NCBI GenBank assembly: GCA_965240325.2
Contig: OZ251240.1
Location: 1,178,001-1,242,000, forward strand
From: Rebecca billardiae RCC1528
Lineage: Eukaryota; Protista; Haptophyta
DNA: 64,000 nucleotides
Direction: 5' to 3'
The notes under the pieces were generated by a model, which did no database searches, was not told where the DNA came from, and saw nothing but the letters and a program-made list of their open reading frames with translations. This document shows positions 15,301-63,511 of the stretch, piece by piece (position 1 is the first letter of the stretch; each line of letters begins with the position of its first letter). Both the position numbers and the translations under genes were made by a program.

Positions 15301-16480
15301 GTGCGCGCGCGTCGCGGCGGCGCGCGCCTACCCACCGCCGCGCGCCGCCGAGCCGAGCGGGCCGGCCGCCTCACCCGGCGGTCCGCCCGCCCACCGTGCC
15401 CGCTCACCCGCGCGCTTCCACCCGCGCCGCCCACCCGTGCCCGCGCCGTGTGCCCGCGGCCTGTGCCCGCGCCGCCGGCCGCGCCGCCGGCCGCGCCGCC
15501 GGCCGCGCCGCCGGCCGCGCGCTGCGTGGCCGCCCCCGTGTGTGCACGCAGGGCAAGGAGATGGGCGTGGGCTTCACCGTGACCGGCCGCGCGCTCTCGC
15601 CCGTCACCCTGCTCCGGAAGGCGGGGATGCGCTCGACCCAGGCGCTCATCCTGACCAAACCGCTCGGCACGGGCGTTCTCTTTGCCGCGCACATGCGACA
15701 CCGCGCACGCGGCCGCTGGGTAAGTGGCGCACTGCATCAGATGATCTCATCCAACGGCCGCGCCGCTTCGGTGCTGCTGCGGCACGAGGCGTCGGCGTGC
15801 ACGGACGTGACGGGCTTCGGGCTGTGCGGCCACCTGCTCGAGCTGTGCCGCGCGTCCAACGTCGGAGCCACAATCCAGCTCGACGCCGTCCCGATGCTAG
15901 ACGGTGTGCGCGGCGCGCGGCGCGCGGCGCGCGGCGCGCGGCGTGCGGCGCGCGGCGCGCGGCGCGCGGCGGACCGGCCGCCTCTCAGGGCATCGTGAGG
16001 GCGCGCGGCCGCGGCAGTCTCGCGCACGCAGTCGGGCAGTGCGCAGACGGCGCGGTCGCCTCTCAGGCGCGAGGCCACGCCGCCCCGACCGCCGTGGCCG
16101 CGCGCCGTCACGCGCCGTCTCGCGCGCGCTCTCACGATCGTCCCTGCGATCGCGCGCGCGCCCGCCCGCCTCTCCCGCGCGCCGTCCGCGCGCGCGCGCC
16201 AGGCGCGGTCGAGTGCGTGCGCGAGGGCATCTTCTCCTCGCTCGCGCCGGCCAACATGCGGCTGCGGCGCGGGCTGGCGAGCGCGCGCACGTCCGAGCCC
16301 GCGTTCGCGCTGCTCTTCGACCCGCAGACGGCGGGCGGGCTGCTTGCCTCCGTGCCGCGCGCGCAGGCGGAGCAGTGCGTCGCAGAGCTGCGCGCGGCGG
16401 GGTACGCGCACGCCGCCGTCATCGGCGAGGTCGAGCCGAGCCCGGGCGACGACGACACGGCGCGCGTCCTGTGCGAGTGA
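12399..16480 (+). CDS. selD: Selenide,water dikinase fused to an N-terminal FAD-dependent pyridine nucleotide-disulfide oxidoreductase domain; introns 13015-13315, 14800-14963, 15231-15551, 15904-16202
   Basis: [44 protein letters not shown] (NDH-2-like); [63 protein letters not shown] (SelD). All four introns restore the frame. Confidence 0.93.
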
Positions 16481-16789
16481 TGGATCAGTTGATGCAAGGC
16501 GAGCGTGACCCAGACCGCGCCGCGTGTCCGGGCTCCTTCCTCACGTTGATGTCGGAGCTTGGATGACCGATGACAGCGTGTCAGGCAACAGCACAGAACA
16601 TATGAGCGCTGCACATTGTGCGCAGTGATCCATCATGGCAGCAGCAGTGGGCAGTCGTGGTCATCACTCAGCAGTGGTCATATGCGCTCTTCGCGTCGGC
16701 TCACGCGGACGGAGGTCGTCGCGGACTCTGTATGTCTGCACCACGTATATTAATCCGTATATACGATACGCTGTCGACTGCTCCGAGTT

Positions 16790-16997: not shown

Positions 16998-19900
16998 TCA
17001 CTCATAGTCGACGTCATCCGCCATCTGCGACGCCGAGACTGACGGCGGCGGCGGCGGCTGCGAATGAGGTGCCAGCTGCTGGCGACTACGGCTCCTTTCT
17101 GTCGCCCGCCGCTGCACCCAGCTCCCCCGTCGGCTGCCACCGCTCGCAGACGATGCCGACCAGGCGGTGCGCAAGCCGCCGACGAGGCTCCGGGAAGAAG
17201 AGCGGCGCCGACCACCCGTGCTGCTCCTCACAAGGAGCTGCTCAAGAAGCTGTACCAGCTCGGCCGCGCTCACCGCCTCGTGCCGGCCGCCACGAAGCGC
17301 AATCGCCATCGGTCCGAACACGCGTTGGTCCATCTCGGCCGTGCGGAGTGACTGCGCGTGATGAGGGTGGTGCACAGGCGCAGTCGTGTCCAATCACGTC
17401 AGTGCGAGAGCTCGGCGCGGGCGCCCGCGTGATTGAGGCGCTGGCAGGGAGGAGGGGGCGAGGCAACCTCCGAGCCGGAGCGATCGCACAGGGGTGCCGC
17501 GCCCGGGCTGGCATGCGCGGCGCGCTGCGCGGGCGCACACCTGAGGCGCCGACCATCGGATTGCGCGGAAGTCGGAGCTCTCCTCGCTCGCTGGGTCATC
17601 CAGTAACATCGTGACGACTCTGCCAGGCGAGAAGCCAGCGCCGTCCTCGAGCGCGCTCGTGAGGCTCCGCTCAAGGGCGCGGTCGCGCACCCACGTCACG
17701 AGAAATCGATCGGCGTGGGCCGCAGCTGCTGGGCCGGCGTCAGCGCCCTCCTCGGCGGTCGAGCCAGCGCCGCGTGCGCCGCTGGCCTCGCGATGGTCCC
17801 AGCTGGTGCGCGGCAGGGGGGTGAGCAGGCTGAGGTCGGCACCGAGGCCGTCGGTGATCTCTGCGAGGGGGTACACCCGACCTGCCTGCAGTGGCTCTCC
17901 CTGTGCGCGGTACGAGCGAGCGCGGTCGTGCGCAGGGGCGCGCACACGACGAGCAGCAGGGCGCGCCCAAATGAGCTGAGGTCTCGCACGGGCAGGGGTC
18001 TCACGTGGCGCTGCTGTCGTCTTGGACTCGTGGGCAGCGTGCGGGTGGCGGCGCTCATGGACGCGCACACCTGATGCGGGCCGCCACCCTCTGCGGCAGC
18101 TGGCAGAGCGAACACCCGCAGCGAGTCAACGTCGACTGCGGCGCTCTGAACCATCGCACCGCGCTCGGCTGGAGCAATGCCGGCCGCGGCGACGCCCGGC
18201 GCGTCCGCTGCCCCCGGAGGCTGGGGCGCGTCGTCGCTCGCGTCAGCAGCGAGCGCGCGCACGGCAGCGACACTCGGCAGGATGACCCCGAACCCAAACG
18301 TGTCTGCCTGCAGCAGCAGCAGCAGCAGGGGCCGCTGGGCACGCCCGCCAGCGGCGGGAGTCTCGGGGGCGGCATCTGCGCCGCAGTCGACGCTCGACGC
18401 AGCCTCGTCAGCGCGGTGCTCGCCCGCAGGCGCGCCCGCAGCGTGCGGCGCCAGCAGGGCAGAGCGCCCGCCACTGCCGAGTCGAATGACGACGCGGCCG
18501 TCCTCCGCGCCTGCGCCGCCCACGCCGCTGCGTAGCGCGCGCACGGCGAGCAGCTTGTGGGCGCGCAGCAGGCTGGCCCACGGCGCGCCTGCGGCGATCT
18601 CCGGCGGCGCGCTTGGGTCCGGCCGCCGCTCGAGGCCCAGCCGCACAGTCAGCTGCGCGGTGGCACTCGCGGCGGCCGGCGGCGCGCCTGCCTCCACCAC
18701 ACCGGCGTCCTCCGCGGCACCGACGACTGCCGCGCTGCGCATGGCGCGTGGCCCGCGCCGCCGCCCACCGCCCGCCTCGGCCTCAGCGGGCGAGGGCGGC
18801 GGCGGCACGAGCACGCCCGCTGCGCGCAGCCTGTCGCACATCTCGAGCAGCGTCAGCTCGAGGTAGCGTCTCTCGCGGTACCAGGGTATGGGCGGGAGGG
18901 CCAGGAGCGCGGAGCCCGCCGAGCCGCCGCCCGCGGGCGCAAGCGCGCGCGCGCGCGCGAGCGGGTCGCCGAAGAGCGCGGGCGCAAGCGCTGCGCAGCG
19001 CTCGTCACCGCAGCGTTCGCACTCGGCGCGCAGCGCGGCGACCGCCGCGCCGCCGTGCAGCCTGGACGCCTCGCAGACCACAACGAACGGCTTGTTCGCC
19101 TCGAACGTGGCGAGCAGCTCACGTCGGCAGTTGAAGCTCGAGAAGAAGCCGGACGAGACGAAGAAGACGACGGCCGCGGACTCGGCGACAAGGCGCTCGA
19201 GGCTGCCAATGTCCGTCAGGTCATCCACGTCCAGGAACGTGCGCAGCTCAGGCCCGACCGCCTCTGCCAGCTTGGCCTTCACTGCGCGCGCCTGGTCCTG
19301 CCCAGTCCGCCACACCTGCGTGGCGGCGCGCGGCGGCGGCAGCGAGAATAAGGGCGAGGGCGGGTGGGGAGGCGAGGCGCTTGGCTGAGCAGGGAGCAGA
19401 GGCGGCGGCCGCCCGTCCACGTGCGCGCGAGAGCGGGGCAGGCGCGCGTGGCGGGGCGCGTACATGCGAGACAAACACGTGGTAGCGGTGCTGGCGGTGC
19501 TTTGCGCGCCCGAGGGGGGCAGCTGTCACGCGCTCGCCGGTGCGCACGTCACGCAGCACGCGCTGCGCGCGCTCGAGCCTCAGCTCGGTGATAAGCAGCG
19601 GCGCGCCCGCGCCGAGCACGAGCCCAAACGCCAGGCAGAGGAACAGCCCGAGCGGCTCCTCGAGCGGGTTTGTCTCCCAGCCGTGCAGCGCCTGCACCTG
19701 CGTCGAGAGGTGCGCCACCAGCGCGCCGATCAGCGTGAAGGCGAGGGCGACGTGCGCGAGCAGCGAGGCCAGATGGGGCGCCGCGCCCTCGAGCGGGCGC
19801 ACGTGCGAGACGAGGAGCGCGTAGCACGTCTGCACGCCGATGGCGAAGAGCAGCTGCGCGACGACGACATACGACTCAGACGCGCTCGCGCTCGCTGGCC

Positions 19901-22900
19901 GGAGCTCGCGCACGAGCGAGCCAATGGTGATCACCACGCCGATCAGCAGGATCTGCCTGAGGACCTCCAGGCACTCCCACCACACGAGCGAGGCGCGGTA
20001 CCCGTCGGCGAGGATGCGCACGCGCGGCTCGCCGTCGCGCAGCGCGGTGTACAGCGCGACGGGCACGCAGAGCGTGTACGTCAGCGCCGCGCCCACCGCC
20101 CACCACAGGTGGCGCGCGTGCGCCGCACCATCGTAGTCCACCGCCAGGTCCGTGCGCAGCACGCGCACAGGCGGCACCGACTCGGTGTCTAGTGAGTCGT
20201 AGGCCCAGTAGGAGTACACGGTCGCCGTGACGGTGGGCAGGAGCAGGTACGCGCCCAGCAGCACGGGCGCAAGCAGCTCCCGCGCCGACAGCGCGCAGCG
20301 CCACGCAAGCAGCGCGCGCCCGAGCGGCACGGCCAGCGCGCACGCCGGGGCGAGTGGCAGCGCCACCAACACGTGGTGGTACGTGGCGCCCGCGCACGCG
20401 AGGCCGTACTGGTGGAAGCGGTCGAACGAGAGGAAGCGGAAGCGCGAGAGCAGCGCGGAGAAGTTGGACGGGAGTGAGACCCCGTAGGTGCGCTCGATCA
20501 GCAGAACAAGCTGTATGTAAGCCAGCGCCGAGCGCGCGCACACCTTGAGGGAAGTGCGCGCACGCGCCGACAGCAGCGGTGCCAGCCACGGCGACGGGCG
20601 CATCGGCGGTGGGGGCGCGCGAGCGCCGGCCTCGGCGGCCGCGGGGTCCGCGGCGGCGCGATCCATTCCAGTGGATGGATGTGCGAGGCGGCGCGCGATG
20701 AGCCGCGCGCACGCGACACACGAGACGAAGCAGCCCACGACACCGAGCGCGATGAGCACGGGCGCCGTGCTCGCTGCGCGCAGCGTGCAACCCTGGCAAC
20801 TGCCCGCCGCATCTTCGTAAGTGCCCGCGGCGCACAGCGCGCAGTACGGCCCCTCGCGGCCGGGCGCGCAGTAGCCGCGCGACGCGTCCGCGCCGCCGGC
20901 GCACGAGGCGCGCGACGCGCACAGCCGGATGTCCGCTGTGCGCGCCGAATGCCGCCAGTACCCCGGCGCGAGCTGCAGTGCGTGCAGATGCGTGCCCGCG
21001 CCACACGCGACGGAGGCGTTGCAGATGTGGCAGCCGCGCTCGCCCGAGCCGTGCGTGCGCTCGTACGTGCCGCTCGGGCAGATGCACTCGGCCTCGGACG
21101 CGGCGCCGGACGAGAGCGTCTCCATACGCGCGTCGAGCGTGCGCACCGCCGCGCACGCCACGCACTGCGTCTCGGAGTGCCCAGCGGGCCGGAACGTATT
21201 GGGTGCGCACGGCACGCACGCTGCGTCGTCCGCGGCTGCTCGGAAGAAGCCGGCAGCGCATGGCGCGCGGTAAGTGAGCGCGCCGCCGTCGGCAGGGCTG
21301 CTTGCGCCACGCGTGCGGATCTCAACACCGAGCGCCTCGCCGTCGCGCGTGCCTGCCGGCCTCGCGGGCGTGGTGCACAGCAGCAGCGTCGACGAGATGC
21401 GCGCCACATCGGCGCACGGCGCGCCGCCGACGAACACGGCAATGTCTGCGCACGGCGCGGCGCACGGCAGCGCGCCGAAGTGCGTGCCCTGCACGATGAG
21501 CTGCTCGCCACCCTCGACTGCCCAGTTGTCTTTGCGCGGCAGGACGTTGCCGACCGAGGCGTGCGGCGGGCTCGGCGGCGGCGGGCTCGGCGGTGGGCTC
21601 GGCGGTGGGCTCGGCGGTGGGCTTGGCGGCGTACTTGGCGGCGGCATGCTCGGCGGCGGTCGCGGCAGTCGCGGAGGCGGGCTGGGCGGCAGGGGCGGCG
21701 ATGGTGGCGATGGCGGCGGGCTGGGGGGCGGCGTCGGCGAGCCAACGACTACATCAAACGAGTCCCGCACGATGGTATCAGCGCCGCCACCGCCGTGGAT
21801 GTAGTCGACGTCGCCGTCGGCAGTGTTGATATAGTCGTCACCAGCGCCACCAAACACTCGATCGTAGGCGTTGGCCGCGCCGTAGATGCGGTCGTTGCCC
21901 TCGCCGCCGTAGAGCCAGTTGTGCGTGATGCCGTGGCTCTGGTAGTCTAAATAGCTAGGGTTGCCGCCGGGATCCACGCGACCACCGCCGAACAGCACGT
22001 CGTCGCCCTCGCCACCGAACAGCACATTGCTCGCATCGCCGCCTTCGCCAAAATCATCATTCACGCCCGGCAGGTCACGTTGGAGGTCGAGCCCCGCGTC
22101 GCCGCCGACGAGCACGTCGTCTCCCGCGCCGCCATACAGCCGGTTGAACACGTAGCCGCCATACGCATACAAGTACCCGTTCGCTGCGTCCCCCCCATAC
22201 AGCGTGTCCGCGCCCTCGCCACCGCTCAGCCGGTTCACCGCGTTGCCGCCCTCGCCATTATATACGCCCACCCCTGCGTTGCCGCCGTGGAGCTCGTCGT
22301 CGCCCTCGTCCCCTGAGAGGACGTTCTCAACGGAACCAGCGTAGTTGCCGCTGACAGCATAGCCACCATTGCCGCCGCGCAGCGTGTCGTTGCCCGCACC
22401 TCCTGAGGCCACGTTGAGCGCCGAGCCGCCGTAATCGTCGTGCGCGTTCGCGCCGCTGCCGCCCTGGATGATGTCGTCGCCTGTGCTGCCATTCATCAGG
22501 TTGGTCACTGCAGCGCCACCCACGCCGGCGTCGCCGCCGAGAATGAAGTCGTCGTCCACGCCGCCGTCGATGTAATTCAGCGCGTCGCCCGGCCTGGTTT
22601 CCATCAGTTCCGGCGGATCGTGCGTGTCCGCGCCAGCCCCGCCGCCGTACAGCCGGTCAGCACCCTCGCCGCCGTCGATCCAGTTGCGCGCGGTCCCCCC
22701 GTTGGCAAAGTACGCAGAGGCGTCGCCTCCGTCCCCGCCATTGATCGTGTCGGCGCCCGCCCCGCCATCGAGCACATTGCGAACGCTGCCAGCAGTGGCC
22801 TCCCCCACATCGGACGCCCCACCTGAGCCACCGCTGATTGTGTCCGCGCCGCCGCCGCCGCTCACCCAGTTGCGCACCTCAGCGAGCCCCTCCTCTCCCC

Positions 22901-25900
22901 ATACGTCGACGCCGAAGCCGTCCAGTACGCCCTCGGCAGCGCTGAGGGTCTCGCCGGTGTCGGTCCCGATGAGCCGAATGTGATGCCACGGCGGTGGTGA
23001 GCTCGGAGGTGACGGCGGGCTCGGCGGGCTCGGCGGCGGCGAGAAGTGCTCGCACATCGAGCCGCCGTCGTCGAAGGTCGCACTGGAGTCGTAGTTGCGC
23101 GCGCGCGAGTCGGTGCAGCCGGAAACCTCTTCGTAGGGCGGGACGGCGAGGTCGATGCCGACGGCGTGCGTGAGCTGCGCAAGCGGGATGCTCGCAAGCG
23201 TGCCGACCACGTCGACGACTCCTGCACCGGCCCCACTGCCTGGCTGGAACACCGCGACGGTCAGCAGAGCAGAGCCAGCTGCAGCGCGCGCCACGCGGAG
23301 TTGCGCAGCAGCGTCCAAGCCGCGCTCGGAGAGCAGGCTGGCGACGCCCGAGAGCAACTCGGCAATAGCCGCGTCAGTGAGCTCGGAGACGTCGCCGTCG
23401 ACAACGAACGTGATGTACGTGACGGCGCCGGGCGGCGAGGGAGGTGGAGGCAGTGGCTGCTGGGGTGAAGGAGGTGGCATGGTCAGGCGGACAGGCGGTG
23501 GCGGCGGCGGCAGCGGTGCGGTGCGCGGAGGTGGCGGCGGCGCGTGCGGCGGCGCCGGCGGCGGTGGCGATGGAGGCGGTGGACTTGGCGACGGAGGCGG
23601 GGGCTGAGGAGGCGGTGGGTACGGCAACGTGCGCGGCGGAGGTGGCGGTGGGCTCGGCGGTGGAAGCGGGGGCGGGCTCGGCGGCGGATGCGGCGGATGC
23701 GGGGGCGGCCCAGGTGGAGCTGGCGGGCTCTGGGGCGGGCTGATGATGAACGGTGGAGGTGGCGGCAGGGACGGTGGGGGGAATGCGCACGCGACAGAGA
23801 GCGTGAAATCGCCAGCGTCGAAGTGTTGACCCCACCCTTCGATCTGCACCACGTACAGCCGCCCTGCCTCCATCGGCATCGCGATCAGCGCCTGCTGGGA
23901 GCAGCCAGGTATGGCGCTGTCGTCGTCGTACGCCACCACCTGCCGCGAGTCGTCCGCGTTGGGGCAGCCGTCCCACACGTGCAGGTACGCATCGAACTGA
24001 GTGCCACACGTGTCGAGGACCACCTCGGCGTCTGTGTCCACCGCGAGCGTGTAAAAGTGCTCGGGAGTGGTGGGCACCAGGAATCGCGACTCGCCGGAGG
24101 TGTGGCCATGGACCACTGAGCCGCAGCCGAGGCGGCCGACCTCGCTCGAGTTGGCCAAGCTGACGCATGGAGGCGGCTGCGGCGACGGCGGCGGCTGCGG
24201 AGGAGCCGGCGGCGGCGCAGGCGGCGAGGGCGGCGTCGGTGGCGAGGGCGGCGGCCCGGGTGGGCTGGGCGGCGTCGGAGGCGCAGCCGGCAGTGCTGGC
24301 AGTGGCGGTGGTGGCGGCGGCGACGCTGGAGGGATGAACTCCACGAGCATGTCCAGATTGGAGTATGCGTTCGTGCCGACATTCGACTGTACCGTCCGGC
24401 CGCACACCGCCCCCGGGGAAAGAGGAAAGAGGGTCTGCATCGATGCAAACACACCCACCGCACCGCACGTAGAGGGCGACGGCTTCCACTGCACAGCGTC
24501 CCTGAGCGTCACGCCGAACGCAAGCTCATCGCCTCTGTACTTTCTGTCCGCGAGGACCTCGAACGCGTCCCAGTCGCCCCCCACGCCGTTCACTTGCACC
24601 TTGATGTAGATGCCGAGATATCGCGTCCAGAAAGAGCTGCTGGACACAGAGAATGTCCAGCGCACATCGTACACGCCATCAGCTGCGGTCGGCACGACGC
24701 TGACCTGCCACAGGCGGTCAGAGCTCGAATAATCCGAAGTTTGGGCCAATCCAGCACACCTGCTCGACAGCCGCCGCCATGAGGAGGACATGTACTCAGG
24801 CTGGTACGACGCGCCAAAGTGCAGCCTGGTGCAGAGCGGCGGTGACTCGTCGGCGGTGCCAGAGGCGATCGGCGCTGGTGGAGGGCTTGGCGGAGATGGT
24901 GGCTGGCCAGGCAAGGGCACGCGCAGGCCAATGACGTATGCAGCGCCGGCTGCGTCGTGATTGCCATCCACAGATGCTGTCCGCCCTGCGCCAATGATGA
25001 CATCGACTTGGTTGCCACCGCCAGAGAGGTCACCAAGGACGGCAATGCCAGAGCCAAAGGCACCACCAGCGCCCAACGGCGCCGTGAGGCCACCAGCGCC
25101 CTCGCCGATGCGCAGCGCAAAACTGAGGGAGCCGTCTGCGCGCAGCCTGAGCACGTGCACGACGCCCCGCGGACTCACGCTCCAGTCGTTGCTCTCGCCG
25201 ACCGCATAGGATTTCCACGAACCGACGAGAGCATCCGGGACTCCGTCACCATCCAGATCGCCCACGCCGGAGCAGCTTCGTCCAAACTCGTTGAAATTGA
25301 GCAGATCCGGCCTGGTTGCGAATGCGCCGTCGTCTTCTACCATTCGCGCCAATATGGTCTGCCCGCCGCGCACCGTGCCATCACTGCGGAGCAGCAGGGT
25401 ACGCACGGCGCCCTGGTCGATGGCAGCGTATCGAAAGGCCTCTGGTGCGTCGAGGTAGCCGCCGCCGTCGTCTCCGCTTGAGCCAACAATTGCATCGGGG
25501 ACGCCGTCGCCGTCAAGATCGCCCAGGCCTGACACACACGAGCCAAACTGGTCGCCCCATGCGAGCGAGACCAGCGGGTACCCACTGGTCTGCCGTGTGA
25601 GCTTGGCTTGAGACTTGACGGTGCCGTCGCGCGACAGCATGAGCACATACGCGGCGCCGCTGTCAGCTAAGCTGTCGCCGTCCGTCCCTGGCGCACCCAC
25701 GATCAGATCAGGCACGCCGTCAGCGTCCACGTCGCCGAGCACGCCCACGTCCGAGCCGAAGCGATCACCATGGGCCAGCCACGCGCCGGCCTGCTGCAGA
25801 CCGCCCGTGGCGCTCGAGATCTTGGCGAAGGTCCGCACGCGCCCGCCCGTTGTGAGGAACAGAACGTAGCACGCGCCGCGCCCAGCACCTCCATCATTAT

Positions 25901-26375
25901 CGCCTGGGGCGCACACGACAAGCTCCACAGTGCCGTCACCATCCACATCGCCAGGAGACGCAACGCCCGAGCCGAACCTGTCTCCGTCCTCCAGTGTGCC
26001 GACGAAGCCGCCAGCAGTGTCCGAGATTGCGCTTGCCGACTTTACTGTCGCGTTGGGGTGGAGGGTGATGATCAGCGCTGCACCGCGCTCGTGCCCGCCG
26101 TCGTCCATGCCAGGAGCTCCGACGAGCACATCAGGGACGCCATCACCGTCCACATCGCCAAGCGCTGCGACGCGATCGCCAAAGTGCGCGTCGCTATGGA
26201 TGGCGCGTTGCGCGGCGCCCAGTGCGCTGGCGGCTGGTATCGTGGCCGCCGCGACGACGATGCCGCTGCCGAACGTCGCGTCGAGCGGGGGAGGGGGTGG
26301 TGGAGGAGGCGGTGCAGGTGGAGGCGGCGAGCTTAGTAACGCGACGAGCAGCATGGCTCCCACGCCGGTGACCAT
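16998..26375 (-). CDS. Giant receptor-like protein: signal peptide, FG-GAP (integrin-alpha) propeller, Pro-rich linkers, PPC-like domain, RTX Ca-binding repeats, IPT/TIG, Cys-rich repeats, multi-TM region, TIR domain; introns 19316-19463, probably 17901-18070 and 17352-17540
   Basis: FG..VA.LGDVDGDGVPD..VGAP repeats; GGAGADT/GGEGDD nonapeptides; GGEQLIVQGTHFG..V.VGGAPC..LLCTTP; CAPGREGPYCALC; about 8 hydrophobic segments; YHVFVSH|VWRTGQDQAR..FLDVDDL..VFFVSSGFFSSFNCRREL. The 3' exons are inferred from GT/AG sites and frame. Confidence 0.8.
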
Positions 26376-59438: not shown

Positions 59439-62400
59439 TCACTCGCTGCACAGGAACGGCAGCACGGCCAGGTCGCACGGCCGCTCCTCCCACTTCCCCG
59501 CCGCGCCGATCACAGCGCATCCTGCGCGCGACGGGTCTCCCCTCGGCTGTCCGGCCGCCCAGTTCGCCAGCCCGAGCTCGCGCGCGCCTGTGGCCCAGCC
59601 CCAGCCCTGCGTGGTGTTGTCTGCAGCCAGCGGCAAGCCGGTCGGTCTACGCAGGCCGAGCCAGACGCCTTCCACGGGCGCATCCCCGCACGCGCACGCG
59701 GCAAGCTCCGCCTCCGAGCGCGTGCGGACGGCGCCGAGCGCGCGCCCTTCGGAGGCGCACGCGGCGCGCGCGCCATCCCACGCGCGAGGCATGCCGCTGC
59801 CCCCACGCCCGCCGCGGTAGGCGAAGCGCGCCCGGCCGCCGCGCGCGGCCGCGTCCCGCCCGACGAGATCGGCGCATTCCGCGCAGCGCTGCTGCGCGGG
59901 CATGGTCATGGCGGCGACCAGCCCGCCGATGCTCGCGCCCGTGAGCACTCCGACCAGCAGCAGCGCGACGAAGGAGCGCCGCCGGCTTCCCACCAGCGCG
60001 GAGCGGCGGTGCGCCGCCGACCAGAGGGCGCCGCCGCCTTCCCCAGGGCTCGGCACGGACAAGCCGACGCCGGGGCTCGGCGTGACGCTCGTGGCCGATT
60101 CGCCGTGCTCGACGACGGCGGGTATTCGCAGCGAGAGCTCGTGCTGCGGCGAGTGCACGCTCGCGGCCGACTCACGGCCGGATGTGGCGGCGGAGAAGCG
60201 GCCCTCGCAGAACGACAGAACGGTGCTCAGCCGGCTGCCACTGGCGCGCCCACTCGACTGGGAGGCTTGGCCGTCAGCCGCGGCGCCGTTGGTGCGCGCG
60301 GCAGCGTGCGCCCTCGACGCCGCCTGTGCTCGCCCGAAGCGGCGCGTGCGCGGCGAGCGCCTCGGCCGCGGCGGCGTTGGCGCGCCGCCAGGCGGCACGA
60401 GCACGGTTGCGCGCTCGGCCACAGGCGTTCCTCCGGCCGCGTGCGCGCCGCCGCCGCCGGCTGCCGCTGTGACGCCCATGCTGTGCACAGATGTCGGCGT
60501 ACCGCCCCCGGGTGCCGTACCAGAGGGCGATGCGTCAGCGGGCGGCGGTGCGGACCAGCTCCCTCCTGCCGGGGCCGGGGCCTTGCCCGCGGCGGGGACG
60601 CGGTGAGCGCCAACGCGCCCAGCCAGCGGGCCTCTGCTCCGCCCTACGGAGTCCGAGGCCGAGCGCGAGCGCGCCAGCGCCTTTGGCCACTCGCGAAGCG
60701 GCGAGCGTGCTGATCGCGACGACCACGAGCGAGCGCTACCGCCGCCGTCGCTCGCGCTGTTCGCGCCGCCGAGCTCGTGAGTGCCTCGATCGCGCGGCGA
60801 TTTTGGCGTGTAGAGCGCACGTGCCAGCAGCCTCGCAGCGCCTGGCGACGGCGTGTCCGACCCCGCGTCCGAGCGGCGCTTGACGCGCGCCGCCGCGTCG
60901 ATCTCGGCGGTGCGCAGCTCCGAGTACGTCGCCTTTGGCGCGGAGAGGAGCAGCTCGCGCACCAGCCGATTGAAGCCGTCGAGCGTGCCGCACGCGCCCT
61001 CGATGCACGAGAGCAGCCGGTCGTAGTCCGCAGCCAGGAAGCAGTTGCACGCGCGCGCGTCGAAGCGAGCGCCGAAGCACGACGCTTCGACCTGGCACAA
61101 GCCGGGCAGCAGGCCCATCTCGACCTCGGTGCCGCCCATCTGCACGAAGACGAAGAGCTGCGTGCACACATGCGCGCGCGTGGGGGGACAGCCCACCGTG
61201 TGGTGCGCGGGCGCGCCGCCAGGGGTAGGGGCGCGAGAGGTGGCGACGGGGTCACGGGGCAGTCGCCAGGTGCCGAGGTGCGGTCGCGCGGCGGGACGGA
61301 CACGCAAGGCGCGGCTCCACGCACGGCGCGAACGCCCGCGCCGCCGCACGGCGCGGCGAGGCACGGCCAAAGTTGCCGCGCTCGGCAGGGCTGGGGTTGC
61401 AGCAGGCGCAGGCGCAGGCGCACCTCAACGACACACCACAGGCTGCGCAGACGCAGCGGGGCCGGTCCGGGGCGGTCCGGCGCCGGGGAGAAGGGGTGCG
61501 CGGCGGGTGAGTGAAGCAGCCGAGCCATGCACAAGCGCGCGCGCTGCACGCGCCGTCCGCCACCCGCGCGACATGGCCCGAAGGGCAGGCAAGCAGGCAG
61601 ACGCCTCGTCGCAGTGTCGCACGTGCCTCCGCGCGCGCGCGGCCGCGCGCGCGTACCGCTGCAGGTAGGTGTCTCCCGCGAGGATCAGCAGCCGGTTGCA
61701 GCCGGCCAGGAAGACGGGGAGGCTCGGCAGGTCGGCGGCGATGTTTGACTGGTCGATGCAGCACTGGTGGCGCGCGGGGTGCGCACGCGGTGGGCGGCGG
61801 GCGGAGGCGCGCGCGCACGCGCGCGCGTGAGTCCGCGCACGACCGCGAGCGGCAGCACGGTGGTGGCTGGGCAGCAGCGGCTGCGTGCGCGTGTGCGCGC
61901 AGGACCCGGAGGCCGCGCAGGCGCGCCCCACCAGCGCTCTGGTAGCGCAGCGCACGCGCGCGGCGGCTGCCACGGCTGACAGCGCAGGCAGCAGCTCCTG
62001 CTGCCACGGCTGTTCAGCAAAGAGCGGGGTCCCGCCGCTCCCGCCGCTCGCTCAGCCAGCGTGCATCCACCATCGCGCGTGCGCACCGCCGCGCATGCCC
62101 CTGTGCAGCCGCCGCCGCTGCGCACACCTTGTCGATCCAGAGATACGGCTGCCGGCCCTGCGTGCTCGCAAAGCGCTCGCACCACGCCTGCAGCTCTGTC
62201 CACTTCTGCTGCGGGTCGTCGTGCCAGCTGCACGGCAGCACGCCACACGTCACACACGCGGGTTGGGCGGGCGCGGAGACGGGCGCATGCACGCGCGCGC
62301 GCGCGTCGGGCCGCACGATGGATGAGGGCGCTGCTGCGGCGCCGCGGCGCCTCGGCCCCGCGCTCCGCAAGGCGCGGCGCAGCGGAGGGGTCGGCCGTCC

Positions 62401-63511
62401 GGCGCGCGCGCGTCGCGCAGCACCTGTGCGAGACGAATGCATCGACCATCTCGAGGTGCGCCGGCACCGAGCGCTCGTACCACTCGTTGCCCGCTGCGTT
62501 CGTCGCGAACACCTCGCGCGCGAGGCTGCTTGCAAGGATCGCGCGCATCCGCTGCCGCCCCGATCGGATCGCTTCCTCGGGCGCCATGTCCTCCGCGAGC
62601 AGGGAGGCGATGCTCGCCGCGGTGCGCACGTTCTCGCCGCCCGCGGCGAGCATCGCCTGCACGCGCTGCAGCACGCCGGGGATCCAGAAGAACCCCGCGA
62701 GCGGCGCCGACACCAGCAAAATGCCCACCTCGCCCATGAGCCGCTCCGAGCGCGTATATGCGGGTACAAAGTGAAGGCCTGCGGCGAGCGCGTACGCGGC
62801 GCCGCAGCCGGTGATGACGTAGAACGCGCCGAAGACCTTCCAGAGGCGTTGGAGCATCCAGCGCGACGTGACGGCGTCGAACGCGGGTGGCGCGCTCACC
62901 CTGCTCTCGGGCGGCATGTCGCTCAAATCGCCGACCGAGGCCGTGGCCCACCTGCTGCGCAGCCGCGACGGCGCGCGGTACCAGCGCGCGAGCCCGGCGA
63001 TGTAGTAGAGGACGAACATCAGGTGGAAGGCGCCGTGCCACGCGACGCGCGCGAACGCGTCGTGCGCGTCGTAAAGCACGCGGCAGTCCGCCACGCCGAG
63101 CACGCGCGTCGCGCCGGGCAGCGCCTGCAGCGCGAGGAACACAGTCGCAAGCAGGACGTTGCATGCAAGCATCAGGTACGTGGCGCCGAGGACGAGGCGC
63201 CGGTCGACCGGGAGGACGGGGAGGACGACCAGCCAGCTCGTGCTCATGCCCAGCACGAAGCCCGCGTAAATCAGCAAAGTCCACTCGCCCTGGTCGAGCA
63301 TGATGAAGGTGAGCCCGCCGAGCGAGCCGAGCACGCCGCCGACCAGCGGCGGCACCGTGAGCTTGCGCCGTCGTGCGCGGCTCGTGGCGCGCGAGTGCTC
63401 GAGCTGGGAGCGAATGCGGTCGACGCGCGTGCTGTGGGCCGCATCGTCGCCCGCGCCGTCCGCGAGCTCCTCGTCGAACGGCACGACCGTGGCGGCCGTC
63501 GACGCCCGCAT
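59439..63511 (-). CDS. 6TM + TIR-like domain + TM + C-terminal C-type lectin domain protein; introns 62228-62423, 61764-62127, 61443-61656, 61158-61423
   Basis: Spliced: VDAFVSHSWHDD..KW..LWIDKCCIDQSNI..LPVFLAGCNRLLILAGDTYLQRLWCVVELFVF. CTLD: WDGARAAC..LGAVRT..VWLGL..WGW..NWAAGQP..CAVI..GKWEERPC..PFLC. Confidence 0.82.

What the first reader, a model, noticed from the sequence alone, without database searches (positions are those of the whole stretch)
16998..26375. TLR-analogous mosaic receptor: integrin-alpha propeller, RTX, IPT and Cys-rich ectodomain, multi-TM core, cytoplasmic TIR with a putative catalytic Glu
Seen: the 2375-aa ORF continues across intron 19316-19463 into a TIR domain (FVSH..FLDVDDL..SFNCRRE), which the ORF track leaves disconnected; the protein is roughly 2900 aa. 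Known: TIR domains with this Glu are often NADases in immune signalling, while FG-GAP, RTX, PPC-like and GCTD..ANY..DDG modules are typical adhesin or ligand-binding parts, several of them bacterial in style. Inference: a modular algal pattern-recognition receptor with an interchangeable ectodomain.
Basis: partly seen in the sequence, partly recalled or inferred. Interest (0 to 1): 0.75.

Follow-up and report, generated by a model that had tools for sequence, protein, structure and literature searches.

The report
Algal mosaic surface receptor with TIR
A GC-rich haptophyte-type alga encodes a roughly 2,950-residue membrane protein with a patchwork outer part, nine membrane helices and an inner TIR domain of the NAD-cleaving immune type; it belongs to a small gene family that keeps the membrane core and swaps the outer sensor.

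Summary
The 2375-aa minus-strand ORF runs on across a GT-AG intron (19463-19316) into a TIR domain. Two further introns carry the gene to the stop at 16998, giving four exons and 2956 aa.

- **Intron 1.** Paralogue C10 is intronless and reads FISH-VWSTGQDQ, which is the junction predicted here. Four other paralogues have an intron at that spot. Contiguous residues of transcript-like environmental proteins map across the gap.
- **Ectodomain.** Pfam confirms FG-GAP, RTX, TIG and, just under cut-off, Ephrin_rec_like. The PPC-like and GCTD modules have no family support.
- **TIR.** The family TIR, modelled on the intronless paralogue, matches SARM1, RPS4 and AbTir TIRs. The Glu of N-C-R-R-E is invariant in six paralogues and aligns with RPS4's C-V-R-E.
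- **Membrane core.** Nine helices put the TIR in the cytoplasm. The core belongs to a very large protist family (6549 hits) linked only indirectly to Pfam PF06011, with no solved counterpart.
- **Family.** This genome holds at least 10 core+TIR genes. Their ectodomains include LRR, C-type lectin/D8C, MAM/beta-helix and FG-GAP. Two more carry a nucleoside hydrolase in place of TIR.

Immune and NADase roles are inferred, not shown. The scan has noted other TIR fusions in this genome, but none with this architecture in my three look-ups.

The parts
26328..26375 (-). Start codon and hydrophobic N-terminus (MVTGVGAMLLVALLSS), a probable signal peptide
   Evidence: First ATG lies 3 codons after an in-frame stop (ORF of 2375 aa; open frame of 2378 aa). 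Sequence. No signal-peptide predictor was run.
24918..26270 (-). FG-GAP beta-propeller (aa 36-486): six blades with FG...GD(V/L)DGDG calcium motifs, plus a probable seventh
   Evidence: Pfam FG-GAP 67.1 bits (5 stretches), FG-GAP_3 and FG-GAP_2. Six motif blades at aa 65, 134, 206, 277, 364 and 440.
24339..24854 (-). Unclassified module (aa 508-679) between Pro/Ser-rich linkers
   Evidence: No Pfam or NCBIfam match at E<=1. Linkers mapped.
23787..24152 (-).
   Evidence: No Pfam hit at E<=1. No PDB sequence hit at E<=10. Only NF038127 at E 0.057.
23052..23417 (-). Unclassified module (aa 987-1108) ending in the motif GCTDSRARNYDSSATFDDGGSMC
   Evidence: No family match. The motif occurs once in the window and nowhere in the paralogue loci or the 152 environmental relatives.
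21747..22973 (-). RTX-type calcium-binding nonapeptide repeat block (aa 1135-1543)
   Evidence: Pfam HemolysinCabind 102 bits, 11 stretches.
21273..21518 (-). IPT/TIG domain (aa 1620-1701)
   Evidence: Pfam TIG 30.4 bits against a cut-off of 20.9.
20781..21263 (-). Cys-rich juxtamembrane stalk (Ephrin_rec_like / TNFR-like), aa about 1705-1865
   Evidence: Ephrin_rec_like 22.0 bits (cut-off 23.1) and TNFR_c6 weak. The same module precedes the core in the paralogues and environmental relatives, where it scores above cut-off.
19590..20765 (-). Nine-helix membrane core (aa 1871-2262)
   Evidence: Nine hydrophobic segments. AlphaFold2 model pLDDT 86.1, pTM 0.85. Eleven further own-genome loci match the core profile. 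6549 relatives in the 1.84-billion-protein library. No direct Pfam hit. 19 of 60 aligned sequences (52 of them environmental relatives) hit PF06011 TRP. No clear solved fold.
19464..19484 (-). First strand of the TIR domain (YHVFVSH), at the end of exon 1
   Evidence: Corresponds to EYHIFISH, strand E4-7 in the model of the intronless paralogue.
19316..19463 (-). Intron 1, 148 nt, GT-AG, phase 0 (CAT|GTACGC...CGCAG|GTG)
   Evidence: Intron position shared with paralogues C27, C3, C26a and C26b, and absent in C10. Spliced protein-to-genome alignment.
18806..19315 (-). Rest of the TIR domain plus its helical extension (VWRTGQDQ...FLDVDDL...SFNCRRELL...PWYRERRYLELTLLEMCDRLRAAG)
   Evidence: Pfam TIR_2 17.9 bits for exon 2 alone, profile positions 11-90. 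Family profile E 1.8e-86. The paralogue model matches SARM1, RPS4 and AbTir TIRs. Glu invariant in six paralogues.
18071..18805 (-). Linker and first part of the conserved post-TIR tail domain (LLLLLLQADTFGFG ... VDSLRVFALP), to the end of exon 2
   Evidence: Motif shared with C26a, C27, C26b, C3, C10, P0002, P0003 and P0006. Tail HMM positions 6-58 at window 18337-18128, E 1.3e-6.
17901..18070 (-). Intron 2, 170 nt, GT-AG, phase 0 (CAG|GTGTGCGC...GCACAG|GGA)
17541..17900 (-). Exon 3 (120 aa): middle of the tail domain (RVYPLAEITDGLGADLSLL ... FLVTWVRD ... RVVTMLLDD ... FRAIRWSAPQ)
   Evidence: Tail HMM positions 62-166, E 2.6e-14. Alignment with the one-frame tails of C26a and C3.
17352..17540 (-). 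Intron 3, 189 nt, GT-AG, phase 0 (CAG|GTGTGCGC...GCGCAG|TCA)
   Evidence: The spacing between the AP and FGP motifs is 12 residues both in the spliced reading here and in the unspliced C26a.
16998..17351 (-). Exon 4 (117 aa plus TGA at 17000-16998): end of the tail domain (VFGPMAIALRGGRHEAVS...) and an acidic C-terminus
   Evidence: Tail HMM positions 165-205, E 5e-6. Stop located.

Best explanation
This is one four-exon gene for a type-I-oriented, multi-pass surface receptor-enzyme.

Shown:
- Outside the cell sit a calcium-type FG-GAP propeller, an RTX repeat block, a TIG domain and a Cys-rich stalk, strung on Pro/Ser-rich linkers.
- A nine-helix core follows. It is a divergent member of the large protist 'Ephrin_rec_like + PF06011-like' membrane family.
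- The odd helix count puts the TIR domain and a conserved tail domain of unknown fold in the cytoplasm.
- The TIR is of the SARM1 / plant-TIR enzymatic type and keeps the catalytic-position Glu.
- The gene belongs to a family of at least 10 in this genome that shares core, TIR and tail. Their ectodomains differ: LRR, C-type lectin/D8C, MAM/beta-helix and FG-GAP.

Inferred mechanism:
- A ligand or surface contact at the ectodomain, probably calcium-dependent, clusters or rearranges the membrane cores.
- That brings the TIR domains together. Enzymatic TIRs need self-association to form their active site.
- The assembled TIRs cleave NAD+, either making a cADPR-type signal or depleting NAD+, which starts a defence or death response.
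For: - Gene structure.
- Domains.
- Topology: nine hydrophobic helices, with basic residues on the predicted inner loops (sequence).
- TIR fold: the model of intronless paralogue C10 (44% identical to window exon 2, which is in the alignment) has pLDDT 81.9. Its best Foldseek matches are C. elegans and human SARM1, RPS4 and AbTir TIRs, E 1.6e-6 to 2.7e-5, probability 1.00.
- Glu: invariant in six paralogues and placed in helix alphaC of the model (H68-79). The window's S-S-G-F-F-S-S-F-N-C-R-R-E-L aligns without gaps to RPS4's S-G-N-Y-T-E-S-V-W-C-V-R-E-L as printed. An own-genome TIR that HMMER aligns to RPS4 and Cat1 puts its Glu in the same column.
- Family.
- Same architecture in environmental proteins, again with varied ectodomains.
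- Literature: protist TIRs with this Glu make cADPR isomers (bioRxiv 10.64898/2026.04.20.719644). TIR genes are tied to virus resistance in the haptophyte Gephyrocapsa huxleyi, including one with an extracellular region and an intracellular TIR that has the Glu (PMC12489294).
Against: - No transcript, protein, localisation or activity data exist for this gene.
- Window exon 2 alone scores below Pfam's TIR_2 cut-off (17.9 against 28).
- The fold test was run on a paralogue, not on the spliced window protein. The joined protein was deliberately not built.
- Residue-level structural superposition on a solved NADase was not possible.
- Three FG-GAP paralogues have lost the Glu, so catalysis is not obligatory in the family.
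- The membrane core is shared by thousands of non-TIR proteins, so the chassis may have a general sensing or adhesion role.
- The ligand is unknown.
Confidence: 0.55

Rival explanations
1. Adhesion or mechanosensing protein, not an immune receptor. The FG-GAP, RTX and TIG ectodomain on glycosylated Pro/Ser stalks binds matrix, scales or other cells. The PF06011-like core acts as in the wider family, possibly as a channel-like or stress-sensing unit. The TIR serves as a protein-interaction scaffold for general signalling such as cell-cell recognition, mating or cell-covering integrity.
For: - FG-GAP, RTX and TIG are typical adhesin modules.
- The core family has 6549 members, most without TIR, joined to RCC1, EF-hand and other parts.
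- There is an indirect link to PF06011 TRP.
- Three paralogues lack the Glu.
Against: - The Glu is invariant in the six closest paralogues.
- The best structural matches are enzymatic TIRs.
- Sister genes on the same chassis carry a nucleoside hydrolase instead of TIR, which points to nucleotide chemistry rather than scaffolding.
- Ectodomain swapping that includes LRR and C-type lectin resembles recognition-receptor families.
Confidence: 0.27
2. Receptor that regulates NAD-derived nucleotide signals as part of a maker/breaker pair. TIR-bearing members make a signal on ligand binding, and nucleoside-hydrolase-bearing members on the same chassis destroy it. On this reading the family is a signalling network and not a simple death switch.
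For: - C12 and C7 carry the same core (profile E 8e-127 and 1e-85), followed by IU_nuc_hydro at 31.7 and 35.5 bits.
- Earlier scan notes on this genome report hydrolase-membrane-TIR fusions (s1-363292, s1-353107, s1-332088). These are leads that I did not check.
Against: - One hydrolase match is below Pfam's cut-off.
- No substrate is known.
- There is no co-expression or genetic link.
- This refines the best explanation rather than excluding it.
Confidence: 0.12
3. Gene-model artefact or pseudogene: the TIR exon belongs to a separate gene, or the locus is decaying.
For: There are no transcript data. High GC content makes long chance ORFs common.
Against: - The intronless paralogue shows the exact predicted junction.
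- The intron position is conserved in four paralogues.
- Contiguous residues of environmental proteins span the gap.
- A transcript-like 4988-nt contig carries LRR, core, TIR and tail in one CDS.
- All four exons are open and hit the family profiles in colinear order.
Confidence: 0.03

Closest known systems
Toll-like receptors (animal LRR - single TM - TIR)
   Same: Extracellular recognition modules, a membrane span and a cytoplasmic TIR. Two paralogues (C27, C15) and the environmental relative P0003 even carry LRRs outside.
   Different: This gene has no LRR. It has nine membrane helices, not one, and a Cys-rich Ephrin_rec_like stalk. Its TIR is closest to SARM1, plant and bacterial enzymatic TIRs. 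An extra conserved tail domain follows the TIR. This is analogy, not membership.
SARM1, plant TIR-NLR (RPS4) and bacterial AbTir enzymatic TIR domains
   Same: Best fold matches. Glu at the catalytic position in helix alphaC.
   Different: Those proteins are cytosolic, with ARM/SAM or NB-LRR sensors. Here the TIR hangs on a multi-pass surface protein. Sequence similarity is too low for a PDB sequence hit. Activity is untested.
Gephyrocapsa huxleyi TIR genes linked to virus resistance (PMC12489294)
   Same: Haptophyte TIR proteins with the conserved Glu. One is modelled there with an extracellular region and an intracellular TIR.
   Different: That paper reports no NBS or LRR domains in the G. 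huxleyi TIR genes. Here the ectodomain is a large named mosaic, the membrane core is a defined family, and the ectodomains are swapped among paralogues. Homology between the two sets was not tested.
Pfam PF06011 'TRP' membrane family (fungal Flc/Pkd2-like) and protist Ephrin_rec_like multi-pass proteins
   Same: Relatives of the core found with the core profile (E<=1e-22) match PF06011, 19 of the 60 sequences aligned, best E 3.2e-10. They have the same Cys-rich stalk before the core. The WWE...E..R motif is shared.
   Different: The window's own core gives no Pfam hit even at E<=10. No solved structure matches the model. Most members of that family have no TIR.
Integrin alpha subunits
   Same: FG-GAP repeats with calcium-type DxDxDG loops forming a probable seven-bladed propeller.
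   Different: There are no integrin leg domains, no single-pass tail and no beta partner. Only the propeller is shared.

Membership tests
TIR domain (fold and Pfam TIR_2 PF13676) | Flavodoxin-like beta-alpha fold superposable on solved TIR domains | tested here: met
   The model of intronless paralogue C10, from an alignment that includes window exon 2, has pLDDT 81.9. There are 78 PDB matches at E<=0.001, and all those listed are TIR domains. The spliced window protein itself was not modelled because the joined step was left out.
TIR domain (fold and Pfam TIR_2 PF13676) | Score above Pfam's gathering threshold (28 bits) | tested here: inconclusive
   Window exon 2 alone scores 17.9 bits, and strand A lies in exon 1. 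Paralogue C10 scores 32.1 bits. Relatives P0003, P0044 and P0058 score 29.1-32.2 bits.
Enzymatic (NADase) TIRs | Glutamate at the catalytic position in helix alphaC | tested here: met
   Invariant in six paralogues and lies in H68-79 of the model. The motif matches RPS4's ...WCVREL without gaps, and Cat1's ...WCWDEL as printed. Column agreement is shown. That this Glu is the catalytic one in RPS4 rests on published knowledge.
Enzymatic (NADase) TIRs | NAD+ cleavage or cADPR-isomer production that depends on that Glu | not testable with these tools
   Needs expression and LC-MS.
Toll-like receptor | LRR ectodomain | tested here: not met
   No LRR family appears in the 2304-aa exon 1 product. 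Paralogues C27 and C15 do have LRRs.
Toll-like receptor | Single transmembrane helix between ectodomain and TIR | tested here: not met
   Nine helices.
Pfam PF06011 TRP-like membrane family | Direct profile match of the membrane core | tested here: not met
   No Pfam hit for the window core or for any of the ten paralogue cores at E<=10. The link is only transitive, through environmental relatives (P0016).
RTX calcium-binding repeats (PF00353) | Tandem GGxGxDxUx nonapeptides above the Pfam cut-off | tested here: met
   102 bits, 11 stretches.
FG-GAP / integrin-alpha-type propeller (PF01839) | Repeated FG-GAP units above the Pfam cut-off, enough for a propeller | tested here: met
   67.1 bits, 5 stretches. 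Six motif blades plus a probable seventh. The propeller fold itself was not modelled.
Pre-peptidase C-terminal (PPC) domain | Profile or structure match | tested here: not met
   No Pfam hit at E<=1 and no PDB sequence hit at E<=10.

The most novel reading that the evidence does not exclude
Haptophytes and other marine protists may have an undescribed class of surface receptors. In it, one conserved chassis (a Cys-rich stalk plus a nine-helix PF06011-like core of unsolved fold) couples freely swapped ectodomains (LRR, lectin, propeller, RTX, beta-helix) to an enzymatic TIR with a partner tail domain. In sister genes the same chassis carries a XopQ-like nucleoside hydrolase instead. That would be a convergent, multi-pass counterpart of Toll-like receptors that writes and erases NAD-derived signals at the plasma membrane.
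Probability: 0.3. Interest if true: 0.8.

Novelty: new variant of a known kind. Interest (0 to 1): 0.62.

Why it matters
TIR enzymes are a shared immune currency of bacteria, plants and animals. How protists couple them to sensing is largely unknown. An early survey found no LRR receptors or TLRs in the haptophyte then sequenced (PMC2939053). A 2025 study tied haptophyte TIR genes to virus resistance but reported no NBS or LRR domains in them (PMC12489294).

This locus and its paralogues give a concrete architecture: named ectodomains, a defined membrane core, and a Glu-bearing TIR. That makes the question testable in three ways.
- Which ectodomain binds what.
- Whether clustering switches on the TIR.
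- Whether the hydrolase-bearing sisters oppose it.

The membrane core is also a very large protist family with no solved structure.

Tried and rejected
- **Word search.** A search for the core among proteins of 1267-4032 aa found nothing. This was a false negative, probably swamped by Ala/Leu-rich words, because the full HMMER search found 6549 relatives.
- **PDB sequence searches.** The TIR profile, the C10 TIR and P0044 gave no TIR hit. The fold search was needed instead.
- **Membrane-core fold.** Foldseek gave nothing below E 0.08. VIA-align gave a best Z of 8.9, to a designed helical protein, which is within the noise for helical bundles. Readings as a GPCR or a classical TRP channel are therefore unsupported.
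- **Post-TIR tail domain.** It has no Pfam hit (C26a tail) and no Atlas lead. hhalign against the family TIR gave 4.7% probability, so 'second degenerate TIR' is only a hunch.
- **PPC-like and GCTD modules.** No support.
- **tblastn of tail domains.** With composition filters it returned nothing against the window. An HMM search then placed exons 2-4.
- **tblastx downstream of the TIR.** It was dominated by low-complexity noise.
- **One mis-framed Pfam call.** It was corrected and rerun.
- **Joined protein.** The spliced protein was never assembled, searched or folded. All searches were run exon by exon or on intronless paralogues.
Full report
**Setting**

The window is G000:C23:1178001-1242000 of a 72-Mb, 41-contig genome with about 60-77% GC. 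The genome has 61 matches to the light-harvesting chlorophyll-binding family, so it is an alga. Atlas leads and earlier scan notes point to a haptophyte, possibly a pavlovophyte. I did not verify the taxon.

**Observation**

The minus-strand ORF 26375..19248 (2375 aa) is real. Its useful frame ends at ...RYHVFVSH, followed by GTACGC. After ...CGCAG, another frame reads VWRTGQDQARAVKAKL...FLDVDDL...FFSSFNCRRELL. No transcripts were available, so I tested the junction by comparison.

- Own-genome searches with the membrane core and with exon 2 each found the same set of loci, with the core followed by the TIR.
- Paralogue C10 reads EYHIFISHVWSTGQDQ in one frame, which is exactly the spliced product predicted here.
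- C27 and C3 have a phase-0 intron at the same boundary. C26a and C26b have one 1 nt later, read as G|gtgcgc...cag|TC.
- Environmental proteins P0003 and P0006 align with contiguous residues to the end of exon 1 and the start of exon 2, skipping the intron.
- P0003 fills a 4988-nt contig that looks like a transcript, with a short leader, one CDS and a lower-GC trailer. That it is a transcript is my inference.

**Rest of the gene**

Beyond the TIR, the paralogues and P0002, P0003 and P0006 share a tail with conserved motifs: LLLLxADTFGxG, VRV(Y/H), L(V/I)xWP, VVTxLLD, FxxxxxxAP and FGxIAxPLRxGxHE. In C26a and C3 this tail lies in one frame. In the window it is split over three frames.

- Exon 2 is 19315-18071.
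- Intron 2 is 18070-17901.
- Exon 3 is 17900-17541.
- Intron 3 is 17540-17352.
- Exon 4 is 17351-16998, with TGA at 17000-16998.

All introns are GT-AG and phase 0, and the two new donors read CAG|GTGTGCGC. An HMM built only from intronless tails hits three separate window ORF pieces in colinear order. Positions 6-58, 62-166 and 165-205 score E 1.3e-6, 2.6e-14 and 5e-6, among 1016 ORF pieces. The total is 2304 + 415 + 120 + 117 = 2956 aa.

Everything was done exon by exon, by reference, or on intronless relatives.

**Ectodomain**

Pro/Ser-rich linkers cut exon 1 into modules.

- Pfam gives FG-GAP at 67 bits, with six calcium-motif blades plus a probable seventh.
- HemolysinCabind scores 102 bits with 11 stretches.
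- TIG scores 30 bits.
- The Cys-rich stalk scores just under cut-off for Ephrin_rec_like (22.0 against 23.1), with weak TNFR hits.
- Three modules (aa 508-679, 742-863, 987-1108) match nothing in Pfam or NCBIfam.
- The 'PPC-like' call has only NF038127 at E 0.057. The GCTD..NY..DDG motif occurs once only.
- The N-terminus is hydrophobic and follows a stop by three codons. No signal-peptide predictor was run.

**Membrane core**

Hydropathy gives nine helices, and so does an AlphaFold2 model built on 60 sequences (pLDDT 86.1, pTM 0.85). With the ectodomain outside, an odd helix count puts the C-terminus inside. The basic stretches after helices 1, 5 and 9 agree with that.

- Pfam finds nothing in the cores, even at E<=10.
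- The word search found nothing.
- Because the claim would rest on absence of relatives, I ran the full HMMER search with the core profile. It returned 6549 proteins at E<=0.001 and 1988 at E<=1e-10.
- The ten looked up, among them the best hits, are unnamed environmental sequences.
- Of the 60 sequences aligned (8 from this genome, 52 environmental relatives), 19 match Pfam PF06011 'TRP', best E 3.2e-10. The core is therefore a divergent relative of that family by a transitive link only.
- No solved structure matches the model.

**TIR**

Window exon 2 alone scores 17.9 bits on TIR_2, over profile positions 11-90, because strand A lies in exon 1. C10, which is unsplit, scores 32.1 bits.

- The C10 model, from an alignment that includes the window, has pLDDT 81.9 and a beta-alpha pattern.
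- Its best PDB matches are the TIRs of C. elegans TIR-1 and human SARM1, RPS4 and AbTir, E 1.6e-6 to 2.7e-5.
- The Glu of N-C-R-R-E is invariant in six paralogues and lies in helix alphaC.
- The stretch from the Ser after strand C to the Glu aligns without gaps to RPS4's SGNYTESVWCVREL, as printed by HMMER.
- An own-genome TIR that HMMER aligns to RPS4 and Cat1 puts its Glu in the same column.
- That this Glu is catalytic in RPS4 and SARM1 is established knowledge, not something I tested.

**Family census**

Profiles of the TIR and of the core find 10 core+TIR loci in this genome. Pfam on their upstream frames gives the following ectodomains.

| Locus | Ectodomain families |
|---|---|
| Window gene | FG-GAP, RTX, TIG, Ephrin_rec_like |
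| C26a (one 3554-aa frame) | MAM, beta-helix, Ephrin_rec_like |
| C26b | two D8C, four C-type lectins, TIG |
| C27 and C15 | LRR, Ephrin_rec_like |
| C3 | Ephrin_rec_like |
| C10 | nothing recognised |
| C14, C18, C35 (near-identical trio) | eight FG-GAP repeats in C14, three stretches detected in C18, none in the C35 frames scanned |

In C14, the trio member whose post-core frame I read, the TIR reads Ala or Gln at the Glu position. Two further loci (C12, C7) have the same stalk and core, followed by an inosine-uridine-type nucleoside hydrolase instead of TIR (31.7 and 35.5 bits; cut-off 34.2).

Environmental relatives with core+TIR also vary outside. They carry LRR, FG-GAP_2, C-type lectin, beta-helix or Chlam_PMP. 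These counts are lower bounds.

**Mechanism**

Shown: the architecture, the topology logic, the TIR fold type, the Glu and the family modularity.

Inferred: ligand or surface contact, probably calcium-dependent given the FG-GAP and RTX parts, clusters the receptors. TIR self-association then forms the NADase site, as in SARM1, plant TIRs and bacterial TIRs. NAD+ is cleaved to a cADPR-type signal, or depleted.

Literature support is indirect. Protist TIRs with this Glu make cADPR isomers, including a clade with haptophyte members (bioRxiv 10.64898/2026.04.20.719644). TIR genes track virus resistance in G. huxleyi (PMC12489294).

The main rival is an adhesion or mechanosensing role with a scaffold TIR. 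The size of the non-TIR core family and the Glu-less trio favour it. The invariant Glu and the hydrolase-bearing sisters count against it.

**Comparison and novelty**

- It is not a TLR, because it has no LRR and nine helices.
- It is not an integrin, because only the propeller is shared.
- It is not a direct PF06011 member by score.
- It is a TIR-domain protein of enzymatic type.

I found no paper that pairs Ephrin_rec_like with TIR, or that treats pavlovophyte TIRs. The library does not cover all journals. I rate the finding as a new variant of a known kind: a membrane TIR receptor on a new chassis.

The scan has noted other TIR fusions in this genome, on other DNA. They include hydrolase-membrane-TIR, H-NOX-TIR, PA-7TM-TIR, and a second TIR-type receptor at 59439-63511 of this window. 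None showed this architecture in my three look-ups.

Noticed in passing
G000:C12:1687741-1691301 (L038:6741-9998) and G000:C7 from about 1390185 (L042:4685-9997): Two genes have the same Cys-rich stalk (Ephrin_rec_like, DUF7630) and the same nine-helix core (profile E 8e-127 and 1e-85). They carry an inosine-uridine-type nucleoside hydrolase (PF01156; 31.7 and 35.5 bits) where the others carry TIR.
   Followed up: partly
G000:C14:1410105-1418462, C18:128741-135484, C35:466741-470739 (L003, L004, L005, L032-L037): This is a near-identical trio of core+TIR genes (FG-GAP found upstream in C14 and C18). In C14, the one read, the TIR reads ...DGYFTADGGALAQLQ..., so the catalytic-position Glu is lost. 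In C14 and C18 a single in-frame stop (1413393-5; 131849-51) separates the FG-GAP frame from the core frame. It probably lies inside an intron.
   Followed up: partly
window 16998-18337; also L021:2252-2896 (C26a): A conserved post-TIR tail domain is shared with distant environmental relatives, where it is a compact unit of about 110 aa. It has no Pfam or Atlas lead. It weakly resembles the C-terminal half of this family's own TIR (hhalign 4.7%).
   Followed up: partly
L007 (G000:C26:930428-934303), alignment A2 columns 201-300: The C26b core holds an in-frame insert that translates as CACVCACVRACVRACV..., like a microsatellite. It is probably an unspliced intron that happens to stay open.
   Followed up: no
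I did not examine it.
   Followed up: no
window 15900-16500, minus strand: A low-complexity open frame gives many tblastx matches to repetitive parts of the paralogue loci. It lies downstream of this gene's stop and was not assigned to any gene.
   Followed up: no
environmental proteins P0011, P0018, P0016: The same membrane core appears with an EF-hand pair inserted (P0011), behind RCC1 repeats (P0018), and with a direct weak PF06011 match (P0016). The chassis is therefore used well beyond TIR proteins.
   Followed up: no
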